IMG/VR virus record: IMGVR_UViG_3300046513_000221
Location: 186,001 to 250,000 of that record
Direction: 5' to 3' (one strand)
DNA: 64,000 nt
The notes beneath the pieces were generated by a model. The model did not search any database and was not told where the DNA came from. It saw nothing but the letters and a program-made list of their open reading frames with translations. How positions within the stretch are numbered: position 1 is the first letter of the stretch; each line of letters starts with the position of its first letter. Of this stretch, positions 37,539 to 44,552 are shown piece after piece. The translations under genes were made by a program, and so were the position numbers.

Positions 37539-37804
37539 TACTTCTTCTCGCTTTCCTTCTTGACGTACTCCACGCCGTCGATGACAACGGCGGTCGCCAG
37601 CGATTTACCTTCCGGGACCGTCGCGGAAGTGATACTGTTCGGGCAACGCATGACGGTCAGGCGCTGTCCGTCAGTATTCGTGAGGTAGAAGGTTTTGCAG
37701 TCCTTCAGTTCGGACGGCATCGAAGCGAAGTAGAGGGTCTTGGCGCTGTCTACGCAGCCGGTCAGAGCCAGCATCGATGCCAGCAGAATTGCGATACGCT
37801 TCAT
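37538..37804 (-). CDS. Small lipoprotein (88 aa)
   Basis: Signal peptide II with lipobox LTGC; LKDCK...RCPNS disulfide motif; TAATG coupling to the upstream gene. Confidence 0.8.
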   Translation of the reverse strand: MKRIAILLASMLALTGCVDSAKTLYFASMPSELKDCKTFYLTNTDGQRLTVMRCPNSITSATVPEGKSLATAVVIDGVEYVKKESEKK

Positions 37805-39288
37805 TACATACGCTCCAGGAAAGAAAGAACCTCGCTGATGAGAGGCTTCGGGTTCTCCTCGATTGCTTCGAGGTAGGACGACAGGTCGTTCGACTCGTCG
37901 TGGCTTGGCAGGTACTCGAACTCGGTACTCATGATGTCGCCGATGAACACGATGATCGACTTGTTCTCTTCGATCTTCTCGCGGATGAGCGAGTACTTCG
38001 AGAGGATGTTGTGGTAGGACTTGGACTGCACGATCTCGGTGACCAGCTTGCCCTTGTGCAGGTTGCGACGGCCACCCTTCGGACGGATCTGCGCCGTGAG
38101 GATCGCCGCCAGCGTGTAGTACTTTTGATCGAGCAGCCACTGGCGGAAGATCATCAGCATGTACAGGTATTCCTCGCGGTTGCACAACTGGACGTTGATC
38201 TTGTCCTGTGCGCCGAGATAGTGCGTCATCAGGCGCACCTGCATCTGGTTGGGCTGCACCTTGCGGGTGTTGTACGCCAGCTCCTCCGGCGAGAACCGCA
38301 TCTTGCGGCGATCGATGAAGTTCTTGATGTTCTCCTTGTCGATCGTGTACTGCATCTCGTTGGAGTTCACCAGACGCATCTCGACGCGTTGGAACGGGCT
38401 GACGTTGCTCTCGTTGCTGTCGGTGCGGATCTGGCTGATCGGCTTGAAGTTGATCTTGATGTTCTGCGTGAACTGGTACATGATCTGCTGCTTGATCACG
38501 ACGTGCAGGAAAGAGACGATCGACTTGTTGATGTCGAGCTTCGGTATCGTGTCCCGTACGATCTTGCGGAACAGGTCAAGCGACATGACGTGTTCGTCCA
38601 CCGAGATGTTCTTCAGGTACTCCCACATGACGCGGTCGGAGTACAGGGTGTTGTTGACGGAGGACTTAATGAACTTCGTGATCTTCTGCGGCAGGTCCAG
38701 CTCCACGCCGTGCTCGTCGATGTTGAACACACCGAAGATGCGATTGAACACGTTGATCGTGATGTCCTGCTCCTTCTTGATCTGCATCACGTCCATATAG
38801 GAGCAGATCAGAGGGATGACGATTCTCGACATGATCGAGATGCAGATCACCATCTTGGCGTAGGAGTCCTTGAACTGTAGTTCCTCCTCGCCGGTGCGGG
38901 TCTCGATCGAGATCGTGTACTCCGCATTCACCTTCTCGCGGATGGCCGTTTGCAGGATCTCGTCGCTGATCAGCTGCTCGAACAGGAAGTCGATGAACAG
39001 ATTCACGTCGCCGAATGGCACACCTTCCTCGGTATGACCCTCGATGAAGGTACCGTCCTGGATGTTCATCATCACAGTCAGGTAGCTCTCCGGCAGGTCG
39101 TCGTAGAGGTCGAAGAAGTACTTCAGATCCTCGACGATCTTACCGATGATCGAGTTGTACACTCGCTTTCGGTTGATGGGAAAGAGGCAGTACTTGGCCT
39201 CCTCCCCGATGTTAAACAGCTGGGTGAAATCGAAGGTGAAGTCCTTCTCGTTCACACCAAACAGACTATCAATATTCGTGATCGTCAT
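37804..39288 (-). CDS. Sigma-like promoter-specificity subunit of the non-virion RNAP (AR9 gp226 / phiKZ gp68 type)
   Basis: RI.IP..C, YSDRVMWEYLKN, PKL..N.S..SFL.VVIKQ, F..N..I.FKP resemble AR9 gp226 as recalled; two genes from a chaperonin as in AR9 (g226/g228). Confidence 0.8.
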   Translation of the reverse strand: MTITNIDSLFGVNEKDFTFDFTQLFNIGEEAKYCLFPINRKRVYNSIIGKIVEDLKYFFDLYDDLPESYLTVMMNIQDGTFIEGHTEEGVPFGDVNLFIDFLFEQLISDEILQTAIREKVNAEYTISIETRTGEEELQFKDSYAKMVICISIMSRIVIPLICSYMDVMQIKKEQDITINVFNRIFGVFNIDEHGVELDLPQKITKFIKSSVNNTLYSDRVMWEYLKNISVDEHVMSLDLFRKIVRDTIPKLDINKSIVSFLHVVIKQQIMYQFTQNIKINFKPISQIRTDSNESNVSPFQRVEMRLVNSNEMQYTIDKENIKNFIDRRKMRFSPEELAYNTRKVQPNQMQVRLMTHYLGAQDKINVQLCNREEYLYMLMIFRQWLLDQKYYTLAAILTAQIRPKGGRRNLHKGKLVTEIVQSKSYHNILSKYSLIREKIEENKSIIVFIGDIMSTEFEYLPSHDESNDLSSYLEAIEENPKPLISEVLSFLERM

Positions 39289-40349: not shown

Positions 40350-42050
40350 TTAGATCAGCTGGTTGATACTCAGGAGCATGCCCACGATCGAGACGGACGC
40401 CTTGAGGATCTGGACGTCGGTGTCGATAGGCGCGAGGACTTGTGTTTCCTCGATGCTCTGGAACTGGCGCTCCAGTACGTCGTACATGCGCGAGTCATTC
40501 ATGTGCAGCGCCTCGCGGATCATCTCCAACGCCTCCGGTTGGGAGCGCAGGACAGGATCCTTGCTGATGATGCAGTAGAACGTGTTGTAGTACACGTCGC
40601 GCAGACGGTCGATGACCTGACGCGTGAACTCCAAGTCGAACTGCTTCAGCACCGCGTCGTCCGCATGGATCTCGTCCCAGCGGTTGGCGATAGAATTGGC
40701 CGCAAAGAACAGCGAGATGTTGCCGCCGAATCCGAAGCCCTTCAGCAGGGCCGATTTACAGGCCAATACGGCATCCTCCACGAGGAATCGACGCGTCTGC
40801 TTCTCTTCGGCGGTGATGCCGCCCACCAGAATGCGAACGGACACGCCGTTCAGCTTGGACAGACGGATGCGCAGGTTACCGCGTACCGAAGGCTGGCTGA
40901 TGGGAGTCTCATCGAACTCCTTCTGCAGAACCTGCAGACGCTCGCCGTAGAACGGGGTGTTCAGGGTCATGCCCTGACCTGCGAGGAAGACCGATTTGGT
41001 TCCGGTCAGTTCGAGGCTGCTCGCCGCACCGAGTTGCTTCAGGTCGAAGGTCGCCGGGTCGCGGATGATGTCGGAGTCCAGATAGATTGCCAGATCGAGG
41101 AACTCGTCGTGCTGCAGCTGGCTCGACAGATCGTACGTCTTGACGATGTAGATCTTGTTCTGCTTGCGCAGGAAGTCTGCCATGCAGGTGTTCAGAACGT
41201 CCTGATGGGTCTGGTCGGTGATGACGACGATGTTGCGCGCCGGGTTCGCCTGTTGGACCTTCTTCAGCAGCTCATAGTGCTCGCCGAAGAACTCGTAGCT
41301 CATGAACACGATCGGCTTGTCTACCGTGATGGTGGACTTGTCGCCGAAGTACATGTTGTGCGCCGGACCACGATCGAACGTGAAGCCGTAACGCATGGTG
41401 TGTGACACAGGTGTCAGCGAATCGCGTGGATCCTCTTCGATGCGCACATCCGACAGATAGGACAGACCGGAGAAGACGTTGGCGATGTACTCACCGATGC
41501 GTACATCGTTGTTGTTCGAGATCTGGCTGATGGCCGTCAGCACGCGCTTGCGGTTGTCGCCATTCACCTGATGGGTGTACTTATTCTCGATCTCGCGTTC
41601 GAGATAGAACACCACGCGGTCCAGCAGATCCAGCAGCTGCTTGCGGGTGTACTTCCGGTCGCGCAGGTCCATCAGGGCTTCATACATGAAGCTCGCCGAC
41701 AGAACGGCACTGGTGGAGCCGTCGCCGACGGTCTTGACCAGATTGTAGGACACCTTCTTCAGCAGCTGGTGGACGGCGACGTCCTGCGCAGCAGCATACT
41801 TCAGGTTCTCCAGAATGGTGTAACCATCCTTGGTGATGATCGGAACACCACCATCATTCTCGATCATGGTGTTCGAGCCCAGCGGACCATAGCTCTTCGC
41901 CAGAACGCTGACCAGCGAGGTCAGGAACTTCAGCGTATCACTGTGGAACTGAGCGTCATCCTTGATGACACCTTGGAAAGGCGACGGCGAACCCATTTGC
42001 TGGGCCACAGTCGTCTCGGCAGGTTTCTTTCTTTTCAAAAATTCGAACAT
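40350..42050 (-). CDS. groEL: Phage GroEL-like chaperonin
   Basis: SYGPLGSNTMI, ITKDGYTI, VGDGSTSA, ISNND..IG, VGG.T..E....R..VEDAV.ACKSA..GF..GG. Confidence 0.93.
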   Translation of the reverse strand: MFEFLKRKKPAETTVAQQMGSPSPFQGVIKDDAQFHSDTLKFLTSLVSVLAKSYGPLGSNTMIENDGGVPIITKDGYTILENLKYAAAQDVAVHQLLKKVSYNLVKTVGDGSTSAVLSASFMYEALMDLRDRKYTRKQLLDLLDRVVFYLEREIENKYTHQVNGDNRKRVLTAISQISNNNDVRIGEYIANVFSGLSYLSDVRIEEDPRDSLTPVSHTMRYGFTFDRGPAHNMYFGDKSTITVDKPIVFMSYEFFGEHYELLKKVQQANPARNIVVITDQTHQDVLNTCMADFLRKQNKIYIVKTYDLSSQLQHDEFLDLAIYLDSDIIRDPATFDLKQLGAASSLELTGTKSVFLAGQGMTLNTPFYGERLQVLQKEFDETPISQPSVRGNLRIRLSKLNGVSVRILVGGITAEEKQTRRFLVEDAVLACKSALLKGFGFGGNISLFFAANSIANRWDEIHADDAVLKQFDLEFTRQVIDRLRDVYYNTFYCIISKDPVLRSQPEALEMIREALHMNDSRMYDVLERQFQSIEETQVLAPIDTDVQILKASVSIVGMLLSINQLI

Positions 42051-42062
42051 TGCGGTTCCTAA

Positions 42063-42266
42063 TTATTTCTTGGCCTTAGGCCGGGGTTTGCTTGCAGCTT
42101 CGGCCTTGGCCTTTTCCATCTCTCGTGCTTCGATCTTGCGCTTGTCCTCGACGAATCTAGCCCTTGCGTCGTAGAGGCTGGATAGCATGGGAAGCTCACA
42201 TTCCATGACGTCCTCCAGAGTCAGCTGCCCCTTGAAGATATCCAAGGTGGCAGCTATCTGGTACAT
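42063..42266 (-). CDS. Small tail/baseplate assembly chaperone-like ORF (T4 gp51 / lambda T-like); frame open upstream to about 42385
   Basis: LTLEDVME.ELP.L..LYD.R pattern; weak RBS; reading frame overlaps the end of the upstream gene in the -1 frame. Confidence 0.55.
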   Translation of the reverse strand: MYQIAATLDIFKGQLTLEDVMECELPMLSSLYDARARFVEDKRKIEAREMEKAKAEAASKPRPKAKK

Positions 42267-42319
42267 GATGTTGTCCAGAGACTTCTGTACTTCGTCATGC
42301 GGGCGTACATCTATGAGCT

Positions 42320-43492
42320 TTACTGAACCCTTGCTATACTTTGAAAAAGCGTGTTGGTCAGATCGACGGTGATGTCGGTGATCATCTCACCGCAGTGGCC
42401 GCACTTCAGGTTAGGCAGCTTGTACGAAACCTTGAACGCGTCCATCTTGGCGCTGATCTCCTTGTCGAGGAACGCCTTGTCTTCCGGATCGATGTCGATG
42501 ATCACGCGGATCTTGTCCTGAATCGTCTCCAGTTCGATGAACTCCAGACGGCCCTCGGACAGAGCCTGAATGTGAGGAATCGCCATGGTGCCGATGTGCT
42601 TCAGGTAGCCGAAGATCTCCGGCTCGACGGCGGGGTGCTGCTCGGCGCGGTTCAGCGTGCGGATGTAGTCGTGCAGGGTCGGCGTGGTCAGGTCCAGAAC
42701 GGTTTTGCTGACCGGCAGGATGATGCGACGGGTGTTGTTTACGACCGACGACTTCACCAGCTCGTTTGCTGGCAGGTTCTTGGACAGCAGGTCGCGAATG
42801 TAGCTGCCAACCTCGTTCTCGTCCTTGGCCTGAATCAGCAGTTCCTTGCTGATCTTCGCCTTGTTGGTCTTCTCGCACGAGCCGCAGATGACGTTGTAGT
42901 CGCCTTCTTCCGGGAAGGTGGCGCAGTAGATGCCGTAGATCAGGGTCTCGAAGTCGGCCTCGGACGTGATCTTCAGCCACAGGTCGAAGTCGATCTTACC
43001 GAAGTTGGCGTTAACCATCTTCGAGTAGGTGAAGTTGAACAGCTTCAGGTTCTGTTCCTTCTCGGTGCCGGTGAACTTGCGCACCTTGATCATGTCGTCG
43101 TTGTTCAGTGCGCGGAAGGCGGCACGGTAGCCCGACTGCAGGGCGACGATCTCGAAGGAAGGCTTCAGGAACAGCGTGTCCATTTCCTGATGGGTGCCCA
43201 GCGGGTTATCCGACTTACGGATGTTGATCGCGGACAGGTCGATGTTCAGCGCGGCCAGAACCTTGCGAGCAGCGCTCTGCGCGGTTTCCTTGGCCGGGGC
43301 CGGTGCTGCCGGTGCCTCGGGAGCCACTGGAGCAGGGGATTGCTCGACAGCGGTCTGTACCGGGGCTTCGCCAGCGATTGCGGTCGAAACTTCCGCTTCC
43401 GCTACGGGAGCAGCCTGTTGACCCAGATCTTCTTGCGAAACGCCCTGCTCCGCCAGCATGCTATGCAGATCGTCGATGTTGTTGATTTCCAT
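42320..43492 (-). CDS. Baseplate hub / tail assembly chaperone (T4 gp26-like) with acidic N-terminal extension
   Basis: Two CxxC motifs (ICGSC, KCGHC), C-terminal I.VD...LF; AGGA RBS at ATG 43492. Confidence 0.6.
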   Translation of the reverse strand: MEINNIDDLHSMLAEQGVSQEDLGQQAAPVAEAEVSTAIAGEAPVQTAVEQSPAPVAPEAPAAPAPAKETAQSAARKVLAALNIDLSAINIRKSDNPLGTHQEMDTLFLKPSFEIVALQSGYRAAFRALNNDDMIKVRKFTGTEKEQNLKLFNFTYSKMVNANFGKIDFDLWLKITSEADFETLIYGIYCATFPEEGDYNVICGSCEKTNKAKISKELLIQAKDENEVGSYIRDLLSKNLPANELVKSSVVNNTRRIILPVSKTVLDLTTPTLHDYIRTLNRAEQHPAVEPEIFGYLKHIGTMAIPHIQALSEGRLEFIELETIQDKIRVIIDIDPEDKAFLDKEISAKMDAFKVSYKLPNLKCGHCGEMITDITVDLTNTLFQSIARVQ

Positions 43493-43542
43493 GTCTGTTT
43501 TCCTATTCAGGTTTAGTGTCGGAGTGAAATACTCCTGATGGT

Positions 43543-43555
43543 CTAACCCCATGTT
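43543..43555 (-). promoter_or_regulatory. Putative late promoter AACA-N6-TAG
   Basis: Minus strand AACA TGGGGT TAG upstream of 43492. Confidence 0.65.
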
Positions 43556-43651
43556 GACCCTTAGGCCATTTTACGATGGCATTTCGTCATAAAAAATATA
43601 TGCGAAACAGAAATTCCCCTAAGCACGAATTATCGGCTTAGGGGATTGCTG

Positions 43652-44086
43652 TCAGAAGTAGAAGTCAGAGACCACATTGTCCTTGACCGGGAGATTCGGA
43701 TCGCGCTTGAACGTCAGTGCGAAGACATCCTTGGCGTCCACCAAGATCGTCAGCCTGAATATGCAAGCCAGAATCGTTTGACCCGACTGCTTATCGGTGG
43801 TGAACTGGATGGTCGCGTCCGAGACCTGATCGCTCGGCAGGTACTTGGATATCTGCGAGTTGATCCTATCTGTGAGGTCGATCAGCGTGGAGTTGTCTGC
43901 GAACTCTTGCAGGTACGTTCCGATACCGATCCCGGCTCCCACGCAGTTCGGGATGGTTCCCGGTTCCATGATAAGGAGGGTCTGGATACGCTTCGCCAAC
44001 GCCTTCAGGTCTGTCTCGACGTGCGATGACCTGAAGGGACTCGGCAGAAGGGTCGCCTCTCCCTTGAGGGTAGCATCGACGGCCAT
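43652..44086 (-). CDS. Baseplate wedge protein, gp25/GPW-like
   Basis: I.TLL.MEPG.IP...G.GIGI..YL.E. Confidence 0.75.
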   Translation of the reverse strand: MAVDATLKGEATLLPSPFRSSHVETDLKALAKRIQTLLIMEPGTIPNCVGAGIGIGTYLQEFADNSTLIDLTDRINSQISKYLPSDQVSDATIQFTTDKQSGQTILACIFRLTILVDAKDVFALTFKRDPNLPVKDNVVSDFYF

Positions 44087-44096
44087 GAGCTACCCC

Positions 44097-44552
44097 TTAG
44101 GTGTTGTTGTTGATGTTGAAGACCTTCTTCTTGTCTTCCGGGGTCGGAGCGGGGTTCGCCTTCTCGTGGTCCAGATGGGCGAGGATGTTGAAGCCCTGAG
44201 CGCGGGACAGCAGCTGGTTCAGAACCTCCAGATGCTCCTTCATGTAAACCAGCTTCTGGTTGTCCTCTTCCTTCTTCTTGTCCATCTTGGACTCGAATTG
44301 GGACATCTTCTCGCGTGCCTCGCGCAGAGCCTGCTGGATGCGAGCGATGCAGTCGGTCTTCTCCTCGTGGGTCTTGATGTTGACCACGCGGCGAGCCAGA
44401 TGGTCGATCTCGGCCACGGAGTAGCCCTTCAGCTTGCGGGTAGCCCACGTCATGAAGCTCTCGACGCTGAACTCTTCGTTCATCATCTTCTGTTCCTCCA
44501 GTGCCAGAACGGCAGTTTCGGTCAGGAAGATCGGTTGCAGATTGAGTGCCAT
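44097..44552 (-). CDS. Hypothetical, probable virion protein
   Basis: Late operon; N-terminal ALE/SVE motifs resembling prohead-protease sites. Confidence 0.6.
   Translation of the reverse strand: MALNLQPIFLTETAVLALEEQKMMNEEFSVESFMTWATRKLKGYSVAEIDHLARRVVNIKTHEEKTDCIARIQQALREAREKMSQFESKMDKKKEEDNQKLVYMKEHLEVLNQLLSRAQGFNILAHLDHEKANPAPTPEDKKKVFNINNNT

What the first reader, a model, noticed from the sequence alone, without database searches (positions are those of the whole stretch)
42063..42390. Candidate programmed -1 frameshift joining the gp26-like chaperone to the downstream ORF
Seen: near its end the upstream gene reads ACG CTT TTT CAA AGT ATA GCA AGG GTT CAG TAA (T-run at 42344-42348 on minus), switching to rare codons. 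The -1 frame is open from about 12 codons before the T-run through SKYSKGSVKLIDVRPHDEVQKSLDNI into MYQIAATL..., whose ATG has only a weak RBS. Established: tail assembly chaperones (lambda G/GT, P2 E/E' on a T-run) use -1 frameshifts. Inference: a G/GT-like pair exists in this jumbo lineage via P-site UUU slippage. The site is not a canonical X XXY YYZ heptamer.
Basis: partly seen in the sequence, partly recalled or inferred. Interest (0 to 1): 0.62.

Follow-up and report, generated by a model that had tools for sequence, protein, structure and literature searches.

The report
Conserved frameshift in jumbo-phage baseplate chaperone
A baseplate-assembly gene of this 263-kb phage, and of its relatives including Bacillus phages AR9/PBS1, Yersinia phage phiR1-37 and Staphylococcus phage S6, almost certainly makes a second, roughly 90-residue-longer protein when ribosomes slip back one base on a short run of T, a recoding event that public annotations miss.

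Summary
The comparative evidence strongly supports a programmed -1 frameshift.

**The site.** The 410-codon gene (43552..42320, minus strand) ends 7 codons after CTT TTT (Leu402-Phe403). The -1 frame is open from 13 codons before the T-run through a 93-residue extension that ends at 42066.

**Conservation.** I examined 18 loci from at least 7 deep lineages.
- Each has a Phe codon preceded by T at the same place (U_UUY), including AR9, BpSp, phiR1-37, S6 and metagenomic relatives. Three have canonical U_UUU_UUN heptamers.
- In each, the homologous downstream domain lies in the -1 frame, and that frame is open from the T-run to the domain.
- Linker length varies from 25 to 37 codons in the 16 tabulated loci.
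- Two loci have no ATG, GTG or TTG in the linker.

**Coding signal.** In close relatives, the stretch that looks intergenic evolves like coding sequence in the -1 frame.

**Codon choice.** CTT and TTT are each used once in this GC3-rich gene. The T5 is the gene's only run of four or more T.

**Sequence reliability.** Three metagenome assemblies show no indel at the site.

**The protein.** The core has the fold of T4 gp26/gp51 hub-assembly chaperones. The extension weakly resembles the C-terminal domain of gp51 (P about 0.005).

**Limits.** No conserved stimulatory RNA structure was found, the efficiency is unknown, and no protein data exist. The mechanism resembles lambda G/GT, but membership of the tail-assembly-chaperone family is not shown.

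The parts
42320..43552 (-). 0-frame gene of 410 aa. It is a gp26/gp51-like baseplate hub assembly chaperone with a disordered N-terminal ~95 aa, two Cys pairs, and stop TAA at 42322..42320.
   Evidence: ORF list. phrog_18873 at E 3e-72. Weak PF12322 hits in 8 of 12 relatives. AlphaFold model with pLDDT 81. Foldseek/BFVD matches to T4-like 'baseplate hub assembly protein' with probability 1.0. Only copy in the 263-kb genome.
42344..42349 (-). Slip site CTT TTT (Leu402 at 42349..42347, Phe403 at 42346..42344). The U_UUU tetramer is 42347..42344. After the shift the next codon read is TCA (42344..42342).
   Evidence: Sequence. Leu-Phe is invariant in the first six-sequence family alignment and nearly so in the 12-sequence one (one metagenomic relative, L024, has Asp-Phe). 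The codon pair is conserved across lineages. Codon-usage outlier.
42066..42386 (-). Open -1 frame from stop to stop. It starts 13 codons before the T-run and covers the 93 codons translated after the shift.
   Evidence: Translation. No ATG, GTG or TTG before 42266.
42267..42344 (-). Linker of the frameshift product (26 codons, starting SKYSKG...). It overlaps the last 7 sense codons of the 0 frame and the apparent intergenic gap.
   Evidence: In four relatives at 53-57% identity, differences fall 25/22/58 on -1-frame codon positions 1/2/3. Synonymous differing codons number 31 in the -1 frame against 7 and 7 in the other two frames.
42066..42266 (-). Conserved helical C-terminal domain (LD-x-F-x-G-K... 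motif) plus a Lys/Glu-rich tail. This is the 67-aa ORF of the finding. It is possibly related to the C-terminal domain of T4 gp51.
   Evidence: Alignments A1, A4 and A5. 188 clusters in the 1.8-billion-protein library. Model with helices 17-37, 44-49 and 52-85 at pLDDT 69. hhalign against gp51 gives P 0.0016-0.0057, and 1 of 200 permutations reaches the observed score. Atlas lead to PF28602 Gp51_C.
43652..44086 (-). Upstream neighbour: gp25-like baseplate wedge subunit (conserved synteny).
   Evidence: phrog_261. Same gene order in AR9, BpSp, S6 and SA1.
40350..42050 (-). Downstream neighbour: phage GroEL-like chaperonin (conserved synteny).
   Evidence: PF00118 and phrog_5725. Same gene order in AR9, phiR1-37, S6 and metagenomic contigs.

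Best explanation
The gene at 43552..42320 encodes a baseplate-hub assembly chaperone of the T4 gp26/gp51 fold. Most ribosomes terminate at TAA 42322..42320 and give a 410-aa protein. A fraction slip one base backwards while tRNA-Phe decodes UUU (42346..42344) preceded by U. The tRNA re-pairs with the overlapping UUU and translation continues in the -1 frame. The result is a protein of about 496 aa: residues 1-403, then a 26-residue flexible linker, then a conserved helical domain of about 40 residues, then a basic tail. The two forms share the chaperone core and differ by the C-terminal module. This is the logic of lambda G/GT or dnaX tau/gamma. The extra module probably corresponds to the C-terminal domain that T4 gp51 carries in frame. 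Shown here: the sequence features, their conservation, the -1-frame coding signature, and the fold of the core. Inferred: that the shift is ribosomal, that both products are made and needed, and that the extension supplies an additional binding function during hub or tail assembly.
For: (1) All 18 loci examined carry U_UUY, with the Phe codon in the 0 frame, 6-13 codons before the 0-frame stop. They are the window, 11 IMG/VR or metagenome loci, AR9, BpSp, phiR1-37, S6, AH12 and SA1. L032 and BpSp have CTT TTT TTT and L033 has ATT TTT TTG, which are canonical heptamers. (2) The homologous downstream domain is always in the -1 frame, although the linker length is 25, 26, 27, 32, 34 or 37 codons. 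(3) The -1 frame is always open across the linker. For 7 deep lineages the joint probability is 5e-5 from shuffles of the intergenic part alone, and 2e-14 from the -1 stop density of the gene body. In four loci the -1 frame opens only 2 codons before the Phe codon. (4) L021 and SA1 have no ATG, GTG or TTG in the linker. GenBank annotators had to use CTG (AR9) or TTG (phiR1-37, S6) as starts. (5) The linker upstream of the window's ATG shows a coding signature in the -1 frame. In the overlap, substitutions fall mostly on 0-frame second positions, so the -1 frame is the more constrained one. (6) The codon choice is unusual: CTT is 1 of 39 Leu codons, TTT is 1 of 16 Phe codons, and this is the only T-run in the gene. 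CTT is the only Leu codon that ends in T. (7) There is no indel in three assemblies. (8) The ATG at 42266 lacks an RBS. (9) U_UU.Y tetramers are documented -1 motifs used by IS1 and IS3 elements (PMC4066793). (10) The core has the gp26/gp51 fold and is the only such gene in the genome. The frameshift product is collinear with full-length T4 gp51.
Against: No protein or RNA data exist; no RNA run holds this phage. No conserved downstream hairpin or pseudoknot and no upstream Shine-Dalgarno-like stimulator was found. Fold z-scores range from -2.7 to +1.4 with different structures in each lineage. In E. coli, tetramer motifs without a stimulator shift at about background level, so the efficiency may be very low or depend on an unrecognised signal. 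In the window's own sub-clade the ATG is conserved, so some independent initiation is possible. The similarity to gp51's C-terminus is weak: P is 0.002-0.02, and a deeper profile did not improve it.
Confidence: 0.85

Rival explanations
1. There are two ordinary genes. The small ORF is translated on its own, from ATG 42266 here and from TTG or CTG starts or by termination-reinitiation in relatives. The T-run only reflects a conserved Leu-Phe.
For: Public records annotate separate small genes. The ATG is conserved in the window's sub-clade. Gene callers list 188 clusters of small ORFs. No frameshift stimulator was found.
Against: This does not explain several things: the frame being -1 in 18 of 18 loci despite six linker lengths; the stop-free linker in AT-rich genomes whose -1 frames carry 13-24% stops elsewhere; the coding-type substitution pattern upstream of the ATG; the loci without any start codon; the CTT TTT choice in GC3-rich genes; or the missing RBS.
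Confidence: 0.06
2. The same fusion protein is made, but by transcriptional slippage. The phage RNA polymerase adds one extra U on the T-run, so part of the mRNA carries the two parts in one frame.
For: The product would be identical, so the conservation data do not discriminate. This clade encodes unusual multisubunit RNA polymerases; a subunit gene lies at 37804..39288. BpSp, L032 and L033 have T7-T8 runs.
Against: Most lineages have only T5, and three have T4 (L015, L024, AH12). From general knowledge, productive transcriptional slippage usually needs runs of about 7-9 or more. The strict phase of the run relative to the Phe codon (U_UUY) fits ribosomal re-pairing, which polymerase slippage would not require.
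Confidence: 0.07
3. It is a sequencing or assembly error, or a recent frameshift mutation, in what is really a single continuous gene.
For: A T5 homopolymer is a typical place for an indel error. One library protein (P0015, PBS1-like fragment) and one GC-rich protein (P0097) read through in one frame.
Against: Three assemblies including a strain variant agree. The same arrangement occurs in all 18 independently sequenced genomes. P0015 switches frame six codons before the slip site, and P0097 contains a long wrong-frame stretch, so both look like indels or artefacts.
Confidence: 0.01

Closest known systems
Lambda G/GT and the conserved -1 frameshift of tail assembly chaperones (P2 E/E+E', HK97 gp10/gp10-11; Xu, Hendrix and Duda 2004, as cited in PMC5009743)
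   Same: A morphogenetic helper gene with a slip site a few codons before its stop, and a -1 ORF that adds a C-terminal module of about 90 residues. The two products share the N-terminal part. The arrangement is conserved across very divergent phages even though the sequence is not. phiR1-37 g241 and g242 lack the 'phage structural protein' note that their neighbours carry, as expected for a chaperone.
   Different: The protein family is different (gp26/gp51 fold, two Cys pairs, about 400 aa against about 130 aa). The gene lies between a gp25-like wedge gene and a chaperonin gene, not between tube and tape-measure genes. The slip motif is mostly a tetramer rather than a heptamer. The resemblance of the N-domain to TAC structures is below the noise level: Z 5.8 to 3klu and Z 4.6 to 2ob9.
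T4 gp26 and gp51, hub assembly chaperones (PF12322; Leiman et al. 2010, PMC3004832)
   Same: The predicted fold of the core matches T4-like 'baseplate hub assembly protein' models. The gene is adjacent to the gp25-like gene, as gene 26 is in T4. Cys pairs are present. gp51 is required for assembly but absent from the particle. The frameshift product is collinear with gp51 including its C-terminal domain.
   Different: The sequence match to PF12322 is below the curated threshold (about 14-15 bits against 24.5). T4 has two separate paralogous genes and no frameshift; gene 26 has an internal in-frame start, 26'. The jumbo-phage protein is about twice as long, with a disordered N-terminus.
Tetramer (Z_ZZ.N) -1 frameshift sites of IS1/IS3 transposases and dnaX-type recoding (Sharma et al. 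2014, PMC4066793)
   Same: A U_UU.Y motif in the correct phase, with cognate re-pairing of tRNA-Phe on UUU. The shift produces a C-terminally different or extended product.
   Different: Those sites depend on a downstream pseudoknot or hairpin or an upstream SD-like element. No conserved stimulator was detected here.

Membership tests
Programmed -1 ribosomal frameshift site (bacterial/phage type) | Slippery motif (Z_ZZ.N tetramer or X_XXY_YYZ heptamer) in the correct phase with the 0 frame | tested here: met
   The window has U_UUU, with UUU as the Phe403 codon. All 18 loci have U_UUY. L032, L033 and BpSp have U_UUU_UUN. The motif class is documented in PMC4066793.
Programmed -1 ribosomal frameshift site (bacterial/phage type) | Overlapping -1 ORF, open from the slip site, conserved in relatives and under coding constraint | tested here: met
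   The frame is open in 18 of 18 loci. The joint probability is 5e-5 to 2e-14. Codon-position differences are 25/22/58. Synonymous differing codons are 31 against 7 and 7.
Programmed -1 ribosomal frameshift site (bacterial/phage type) | Stimulatory element (downstream hairpin or pseudoknot, or upstream SD-like sequence) | tested here: inconclusive
   The 75 nt downstream were folded in 16 loci. Z-scores run from -2.7 to +1.4 and no structure is shared. No consistent upstream SD was seen by eye.
Programmed -1 ribosomal frameshift site (bacterial/phage type) | Trans-frame protein actually produced | not testable with these tools
   No RNA or proteome data exist for this phage. Mass spectrometry, western blot or a reporter assay is needed.
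Lambda G/GT-type tail assembly chaperones | [quoted passage not shown] | tested here: met
   Met at the level of gene architecture and conservation. The products themselves were not observed.
Lambda G/GT-type tail assembly chaperones | Gene pair placed between the tail tube gene and the tape-measure gene | tested here: not met
   The neighbours are a gp25-like wedge gene upstream and a GroEL-like gene downstream. The same holds in AR9, phiR1-37 and S6.
Lambda G/GT-type tail assembly chaperones | Tail-assembly-chaperone fold or Pfam TAC family | tested here: inconclusive
   There are no Pfam TAC hits. The best solved-structure matches of the N-domain are 3klu (Z 5.8), 5ir0 (4.7), 2ob9 HK97 TAC (4.6) and 3fgx (4.2). 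The theme is coherent, but the values lie under the tool's noise level of about 7-8. Foldseek against PDB gave nothing.
T4 gp26/gp51 hub assembly chaperones (PF12322 T4_baseplate) | Match to PF12322 above the gathering score | tested here: not met
   The score is 13.8-14.9 bits against a cut-off of 24.5. Eight of 12 relatives give weak hits, the best at E 1e-3. T4 gp26 and gp51 score 216 and 178 bits.
T4 gp26/gp51 hub assembly chaperones (PF12322 T4_baseplate) | Shared fold with T4-like hub assembly proteins | tested here: met
   Foldseek/BFVD gives probability 1.0, E 1e-8 to 1e-5, and TM by target 0.55-0.67 to several proteins of about 250 aa named 'Baseplate hub assembly protein, T4-like', 'hub subunit' or 'hub assembly chaperone'. 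Twenty-eight of the 30 listed named atlas clusters carry PF12322.
T4 gp26/gp51 hub assembly chaperones (PF12322 T4_baseplate) | gp51-type C-terminal domain (Pfam Gp51_C) | tested here: inconclusive
   Present only in the -1 extension, if at all. hhalign gives P 0.0057 (A4 against gp51 alignment A6) and 0.0016 with the fused alignment. One of 200 column permutations reaches the observed score. A deeper profile gives P 0.022 over 12 columns. The atlas lead is at rank 16 with score 0.90. PF28602 does not appear to be in the local Pfam copy, since T4 gp51 itself matched only PF12322.
T4 gp26/gp51 hub assembly chaperones (PF12322 T4_baseplate) | Required for hub assembly but absent from the virion | not testable with these tools
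   The only hint is indirect. The phiR1-37 record marks neighbouring genes as 'phage structural protein', but not g241 or g242.

The most novel reading that the evidence does not exclude
In the AR9/PBS1/phiR1-37/S6-type jumbo phages, one gene makes two forms of the hub assembly chaperone by a conserved -1 frameshift: a short core-only form, and a long form equivalent to full-length T4 gp51 (core plus a Gp51_C-like domain). If so, the gp26/gp51 family would be the counterpart in T4-type and jumbo myoviruses of the G/GT tail assembly chaperones, possibly even sharing their fold. T4 would achieve with two paralogous genes what these phages achieve by recoding. That would give gp51, described as 'essential, function unknown', a testable role: ratio-controlled chaperoning of the hub or tape-measure complex.
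Probability: 0.35. Interest if true: 0.78.

Novelty: new variant of a known kind. Interest (0 to 1): 0.64.

Why it matters
Programmed frameshifting in tail assembly genes is a classic finding, but it is known for the G/GT-type chaperones placed next to the tape-measure gene. T4-like phages and jumbo phages have seemed to lack it.

Here the same recoding logic appears in a different protein family, the gp26/gp51 hub-assembly chaperones. It is conserved across a whole clade of giant phages that infect Bacillus, Staphylococcus, Yersinia and soil bacteria, with 188 sequence clusters of the extension domain.

Four consequences follow.
- The annotation of AR9, PBS1, phiR1-37, S6 and related genomes needs correcting, because the 'hypothetical' small ORFs with CTG or TTG starts are probably not free-standing genes.
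- It adds a well-conserved natural example of a minimal U_UUY slip site without an obvious stimulator.
- AR9/PBS1 in B. subtilis offers a tractable system to ask why hub assembly needs two forms of the chaperone.
- It gives a hypothesis for the long-unknown role of T4 gp51.

Tried and rejected
**Searches that found nothing**
- DNA-level search of the locus against the phage collection: no match.
- tblastn of the 95-aa -1 ORF against phages: no match. It is too short and divergent; homology was instead shown by alignment and profile search.
- Pfam and PHROG scans of the small ORF and of the extension: nothing significant.
- Foldseek of the core against PDB: no match with E at or below 0.001.
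- Profile search of the core against PDB sequences: only one chance hit.
- Foldseek (BFVD) and atlas shape searches with the extension model: only its own family of tiny viral proteins.
- tblastn of the long-linker subfamily member P0082 against phages: no match.

**Tests that did not support the idea being tested**
- Stimulatory RNA structure: none is conserved.
- Natural in-frame fusions of core and extension: the two long proteins found (P0015, P0097) look like indels or wrong-frame calls, not clean fusions.
- Extending the pattern to phiKZ, RSF1, phiEaH2 and Ea35-70: no sequence match to either the core or the extension profile. BFVD shows fold-level core look-alikes in RSF1, phiEaH2 and the Ea35-70-like phage Special G, so this remains open.
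- A deeper extension profile against gp51: no better than the small one.

**Literature**
- No description of this frameshift was found in the open library. Searches covered AR9, phiR1-37, gp26/gp51, baseplate hub, PRFect and the recoding review. Subscription-only papers are not covered.

**Not used**
- Complex prediction: no specific binding partner is claimed.
- The frameshift fusion protein could not be handed to the fold tools because it is not a letter-for-letter translation. It was built only inside scripts for alignment.
Full report
**1. The observation**

On the minus strand a 410-codon ORF (43552..42320) ends ACG CTT TTT CAA AGT ATA GCA AGG GTT CAG TAA. The five T lie at 42348..42344. 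The -1 frame is open for 13 codons before the T-run. It continues through the apparent 53-nt gap after the stop into the 67-codon ORF that starts at ATG 42266 and ends at 42066.

The ATG has no Shine-Dalgarno-like element. Neighbouring genes with a clear start carry TAAGGG or TAGGA at -12..-6.

The window is part of a complete 263,413-bp virus record with terminal repeats. Its genes have GC3 of 0.70-0.88, and 0.80 in this gene. In the region CTT is 4.8% of Leu codons and TTT 7.3% of Phe codons. Within this gene each is used exactly once, side by side, and they form the gene's only run of four or more T.

Contigs of three rhizosphere metagenome runs cover the site without any insertion or deletion. 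One run may be the source, and one is a strain variant with 16 SNPs in 2.4 kb. The T5 is therefore real.

**2. What the genes are**

The 410-aa protein matches phrog_18873 (E 3e-72) and only weakly matches Pfam PF12322 'T4_baseplate'. By tblastn its relatives, at about 25-31% identity, are unnamed proteins of the giant phages AR9/PBS1, BpSp, phiR1-37 and the Staphylococcus S6/Machias/AH12 group. There are also closer metagenomic viruses at 41-62% identity.

Gene order is conserved: gp25-like baseplate wedge (in phiR1-37 an unnamed structural-protein gene sits there), then this gene, then a small ORF, sometimes a second small ORF, then a GroEL-like chaperonin.

An AlphaFold model of residues 95-410 has pLDDT 81 and pTM 0.75. 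It has no clear match among solved structures by Foldseek. In BFVD it matches, with probability 1.0, its own family and many proteins of about 250 aa named 'baseplate hub assembly protein, T4-like', 'hub subunit' or 'hub assembly chaperone'. It also matches 490-690-aa proteins of other jumbo phages.

T4 gp26 and gp51 are both strong PF12322 members. Both are listed as hub assembly chaperones, and gp51 is essential, of unknown function and absent from the particle (PMC3004832). The core is therefore a distant relative of gp26/gp51 at fold level. It is the only such gene detectable in this genome.

**3. Comparative test of the frameshift**

I examined 18 loci: the window, L005, L007, L012, L015, L016, L017, L019, L021, L024, L032, L033, AR9, phiR1-37, S6, BpSp, AH12 and SA1. 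Near-duplicates were ignored. These features are common to all of them.

- **(a) Slip motif.** A Leu-Phe pair, invariant in the first six-sequence alignment and nearly so in the 12-sequence one (L024 has Asp-Phe), lies 6-13 codons before the 0-frame stop. The Phe codon is always preceded by T.
  - It is usually CTT TTT.
  - Variants are CTT TTC (L015, AH12), GAT TTT (L024) and CTT TTT T (L019).
  - L032 and BpSp have CTT TTT TTT and L033 has ATT TTT TTG, which are canonical U_UUU_UUN heptamers.
  - CTT is the only Leu codon ending in T, so the conserved Leu plus the need for U_UUY explains the fixed codon.
- **(b) Frame.** A homologous domain of about 40 residues (LD-x-F-x-G-K...; alignments A1, A4, A5) always lies downstream in the -1 frame. 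The distance from Phe to that motif is 25, 26, 27, 32, 34 or 37 codons (longer in the L032/L033 subfamily). Repeated indels have therefore preserved the frame.
- **(c) Openness.** The -1 frame is stop-free from the T-run to the domain in every locus.
  - For seven deep lineages the joint probability is 5e-5 when only the part after the 0-frame stop is shuffled.
  - It is 2e-14 when the -1 stop density of each gene body is used; in the AT-rich genomes that density is 13-24%.
  - In L005, L007, S6 and SA1 the -1 frame opens only two codons before the Phe codon. The slip window is then about nine codons and contains the T-run.
- **(d) Start codons.** L021 and SA1 have no ATG, GTG or TTG anywhere in the linker. 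GenBank annotators resorted to CTG (AR9) or TTG (phiR1-37, S6) starts.
- **(e) Coding signature.** Four relatives of the window (53-57% identical in the core by tblastn) were compared over the 18 codons between the 0-frame stop and the ATG.
  - Differences fall 25/22/58 on -1-frame codon positions 1/2/3.
  - Synonymous codon differences number 31 in the -1 frame against 7 and 7 in the other frames.
  - In the overlap, changes fall mostly on 0-frame second positions, so the -1 reading is the more constrained one.

A profile of the extension domain finds 188 clusters in a library of 1.8 billion proteins. Nearly all are ORFs of 41-145 aa whose called starts are scattered. The two long hits are a PBS1-like fragment that changes frame six codons early and a GC-rich ORF with a long wrong-frame stretch. 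Both look like indels or artefacts.

**4. Mechanism**

The best reading is a programmed -1 ribosomal frameshift on U_UUY. tRNA-Phe re-pairs from UUU (or UUC) to the overlapping UUU, and the next codon read is UCA. The result is a protein of about 496 aa with the junction ...Thr-Leu-Phe then Ser-Lys-Tyr....

U_UU.C and U_UU.U rank second and third among tetramer motifs in E. coli. They give 0.26-5.6% shifting with a pseudoknot, and they are used by IS1 and IS3 elements (PMC4066793). The site is therefore a recognised class, not an oddity. Sequence cannot say whether the slip happens with tRNA-Phe in the A site or the P site.

I found no conserved downstream structure and no upstream SD-like element. 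The efficiency is unknown and may be low, as for lambda GT. Transcriptional slippage would give the same protein. It is less likely because most lineages have T5 and three have T4, and because the run keeps a strict phase with the Phe codon.

**5. What the extension may be**

The extension has three parts: a variable Gly/Ser/Lys-rich linker, a conserved helical module (model pLDDT 69; helices 17-37, 44-49 and 52-85) and a basic tail.

An atlas look-alike search gave only tiny viral proteins. One cluster, at rank 16 with score 0.90, carries Pfam Gp51_C. T4 gp51 is 249 aa, PF12322 covers residues 1-201, and about 48 residues remain.

- Profile-profile comparison aligns the extension module with that C-terminal stretch at P = 0.0057.
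- With core and extension joined in a script, the best local match to the gp51 alignment is again the C-terminal domain, at P = 0.0016. A greedy alignment is collinear: first CxxC, second Cys pair, the Leu-Phe of the slip site opposite the conserved hydrophobic-Phe pair (V/I/L, then F) of gp51, then the C-terminal module.
- Only 1 of 200 column-permuted gp51 alignments reached the observed score.
- A deeper profile did not improve the score, giving P 0.022.

I treat this homology as probable but unproven. If true, the long form is the full gp51 equivalent and the short form lacks its C-terminal module.

**6. Relation to G/GT**

The architecture and the logic are the same: a slip site near the 3' end of an assembly-helper gene, an extension of about 90 residues, and deep conservation. 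phiR1-37 g241 and g242 lack the 'structural protein' note that their neighbours carry.

Membership in the tail-assembly-chaperone family is not shown. The gene is not next to a tape-measure gene and there are no Pfam TAC hits. The four best solved-structure matches of the N-domain are 3klu YqbN (Z 5.8), 5ir0 (4.7), 2ob9 HK97 tail assembly chaperone (4.6) and 3fgx (4.2). They form a suggestive theme, but all lie below the aligner's stated noise level. From memory only, 3klu is an XkdN-type TAC; this was not verified here.

**7. Novelty and verdict**

None of the public records examined joins the two ORFs. No paper in the open library describes this frameshift.

I rate it a new variant of a known kind. 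It is a conserved -1 frameshift of the tail-assembly type, but it sits in the gp26/gp51 hub-chaperone family of AR9-like jumbo phages, and it uses a minimal U_UUY site.

- Confidence that a trans-frame product is made by recoding at this site: about 0.85 for ribosomal slippage, plus 0.07 for transcriptional slippage.
- Confidence in the gp51-equivalence and G/GT-counterpart reading: about 0.35.

Noticed in passing
window 40350-42050 (-); L001 4605-6293; L002 4270-5994; L003 4479-6221: A phage GroEL-like chaperonin gene (PF00118) always follows the frameshift pair, directly here and after one more small ORF of about 100 aa in AR9, BpSp and S6-like phages. Whether the chaperonin and the hub chaperone work together is unknown.
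   Followed up: partly
L001 3978-4178 (AR9 gp229), L002 4038-4205 (phiR1-37 g242), L003 3939-4139 (S6_1160), L028 2547-2687, L029 2586-2738, L030 2487-2645: The small 'hypothetical protein' CDSs annotated downstream of the core gene in public records use CTG or TTG starts, or start inside the conserved domain. They are probably mis-annotated parts of the -1 extension.
   Followed up: yes
protein P0015 (313 aa, PBS1/AR9-like contig fragment from the protein library): This variant reads from the core into the -1 extension in one frame because of a frame change six codons before the slip site. It is either a natural constitutive-fusion mutant or an assembly error.
   Followed up: partly
window 42066-42347 (-): The extension has lower GC3 (0.64) than the surrounding genes (0.70-0.88). 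Its linker is rich in A/T-ending codons such as TCA, TAT, GTA and ATA. The reason is unknown; slower translation or less mRNA structure are possibilities.
   Followed up: no
window 41706-42632: The strain variant in run X3 has 16 SNPs over 41647-44100 but none in the roughly 900 bases around the slip site and extension.
   Followed up: no
window 37804-39288 (-): This ORF matches a phage RNA polymerase subunit family (phrog_25005). Together with the AR9/phiR1-37-like synteny, it suggests this uncultured rhizosphere phage belongs to the clade with multisubunit viral RNA polymerases. From memory, the isolates in that clade have uracil-containing DNA.
   Followed up: no
L024 132-1378 (GC-rich metagenome contig): The -1 frame of the whole core gene is stop-free (0 stops in 337 codons). 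In such GC-rich relatives openness alone is uninformative, and gene callers can produce long false ORFs like P0097.
   Followed up: partly
BFVD hits: Distant core look-alikes of 489-669 aa in other jumbo phages (I1VX76, A0A7G8AM66, A0A8S5TGZ1) sit, judging by accession order or shared virus name, next to small proteins (I1VX77, A0A7G8AM65, A0A8S5TIA1). Those small proteins appear among the weak structural matches of the extension, so the two-part arrangement may reach beyond the AR9-like clade.
   Followed up: partly
H52, Acinetobacter phage Berthold (MN709128.1 119798-120547): This record names its gp51 homolog 'tape measure protein assembly chaperone', which shows that some annotators already treat gp51 as a TAC analogue.
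   Followed up: no
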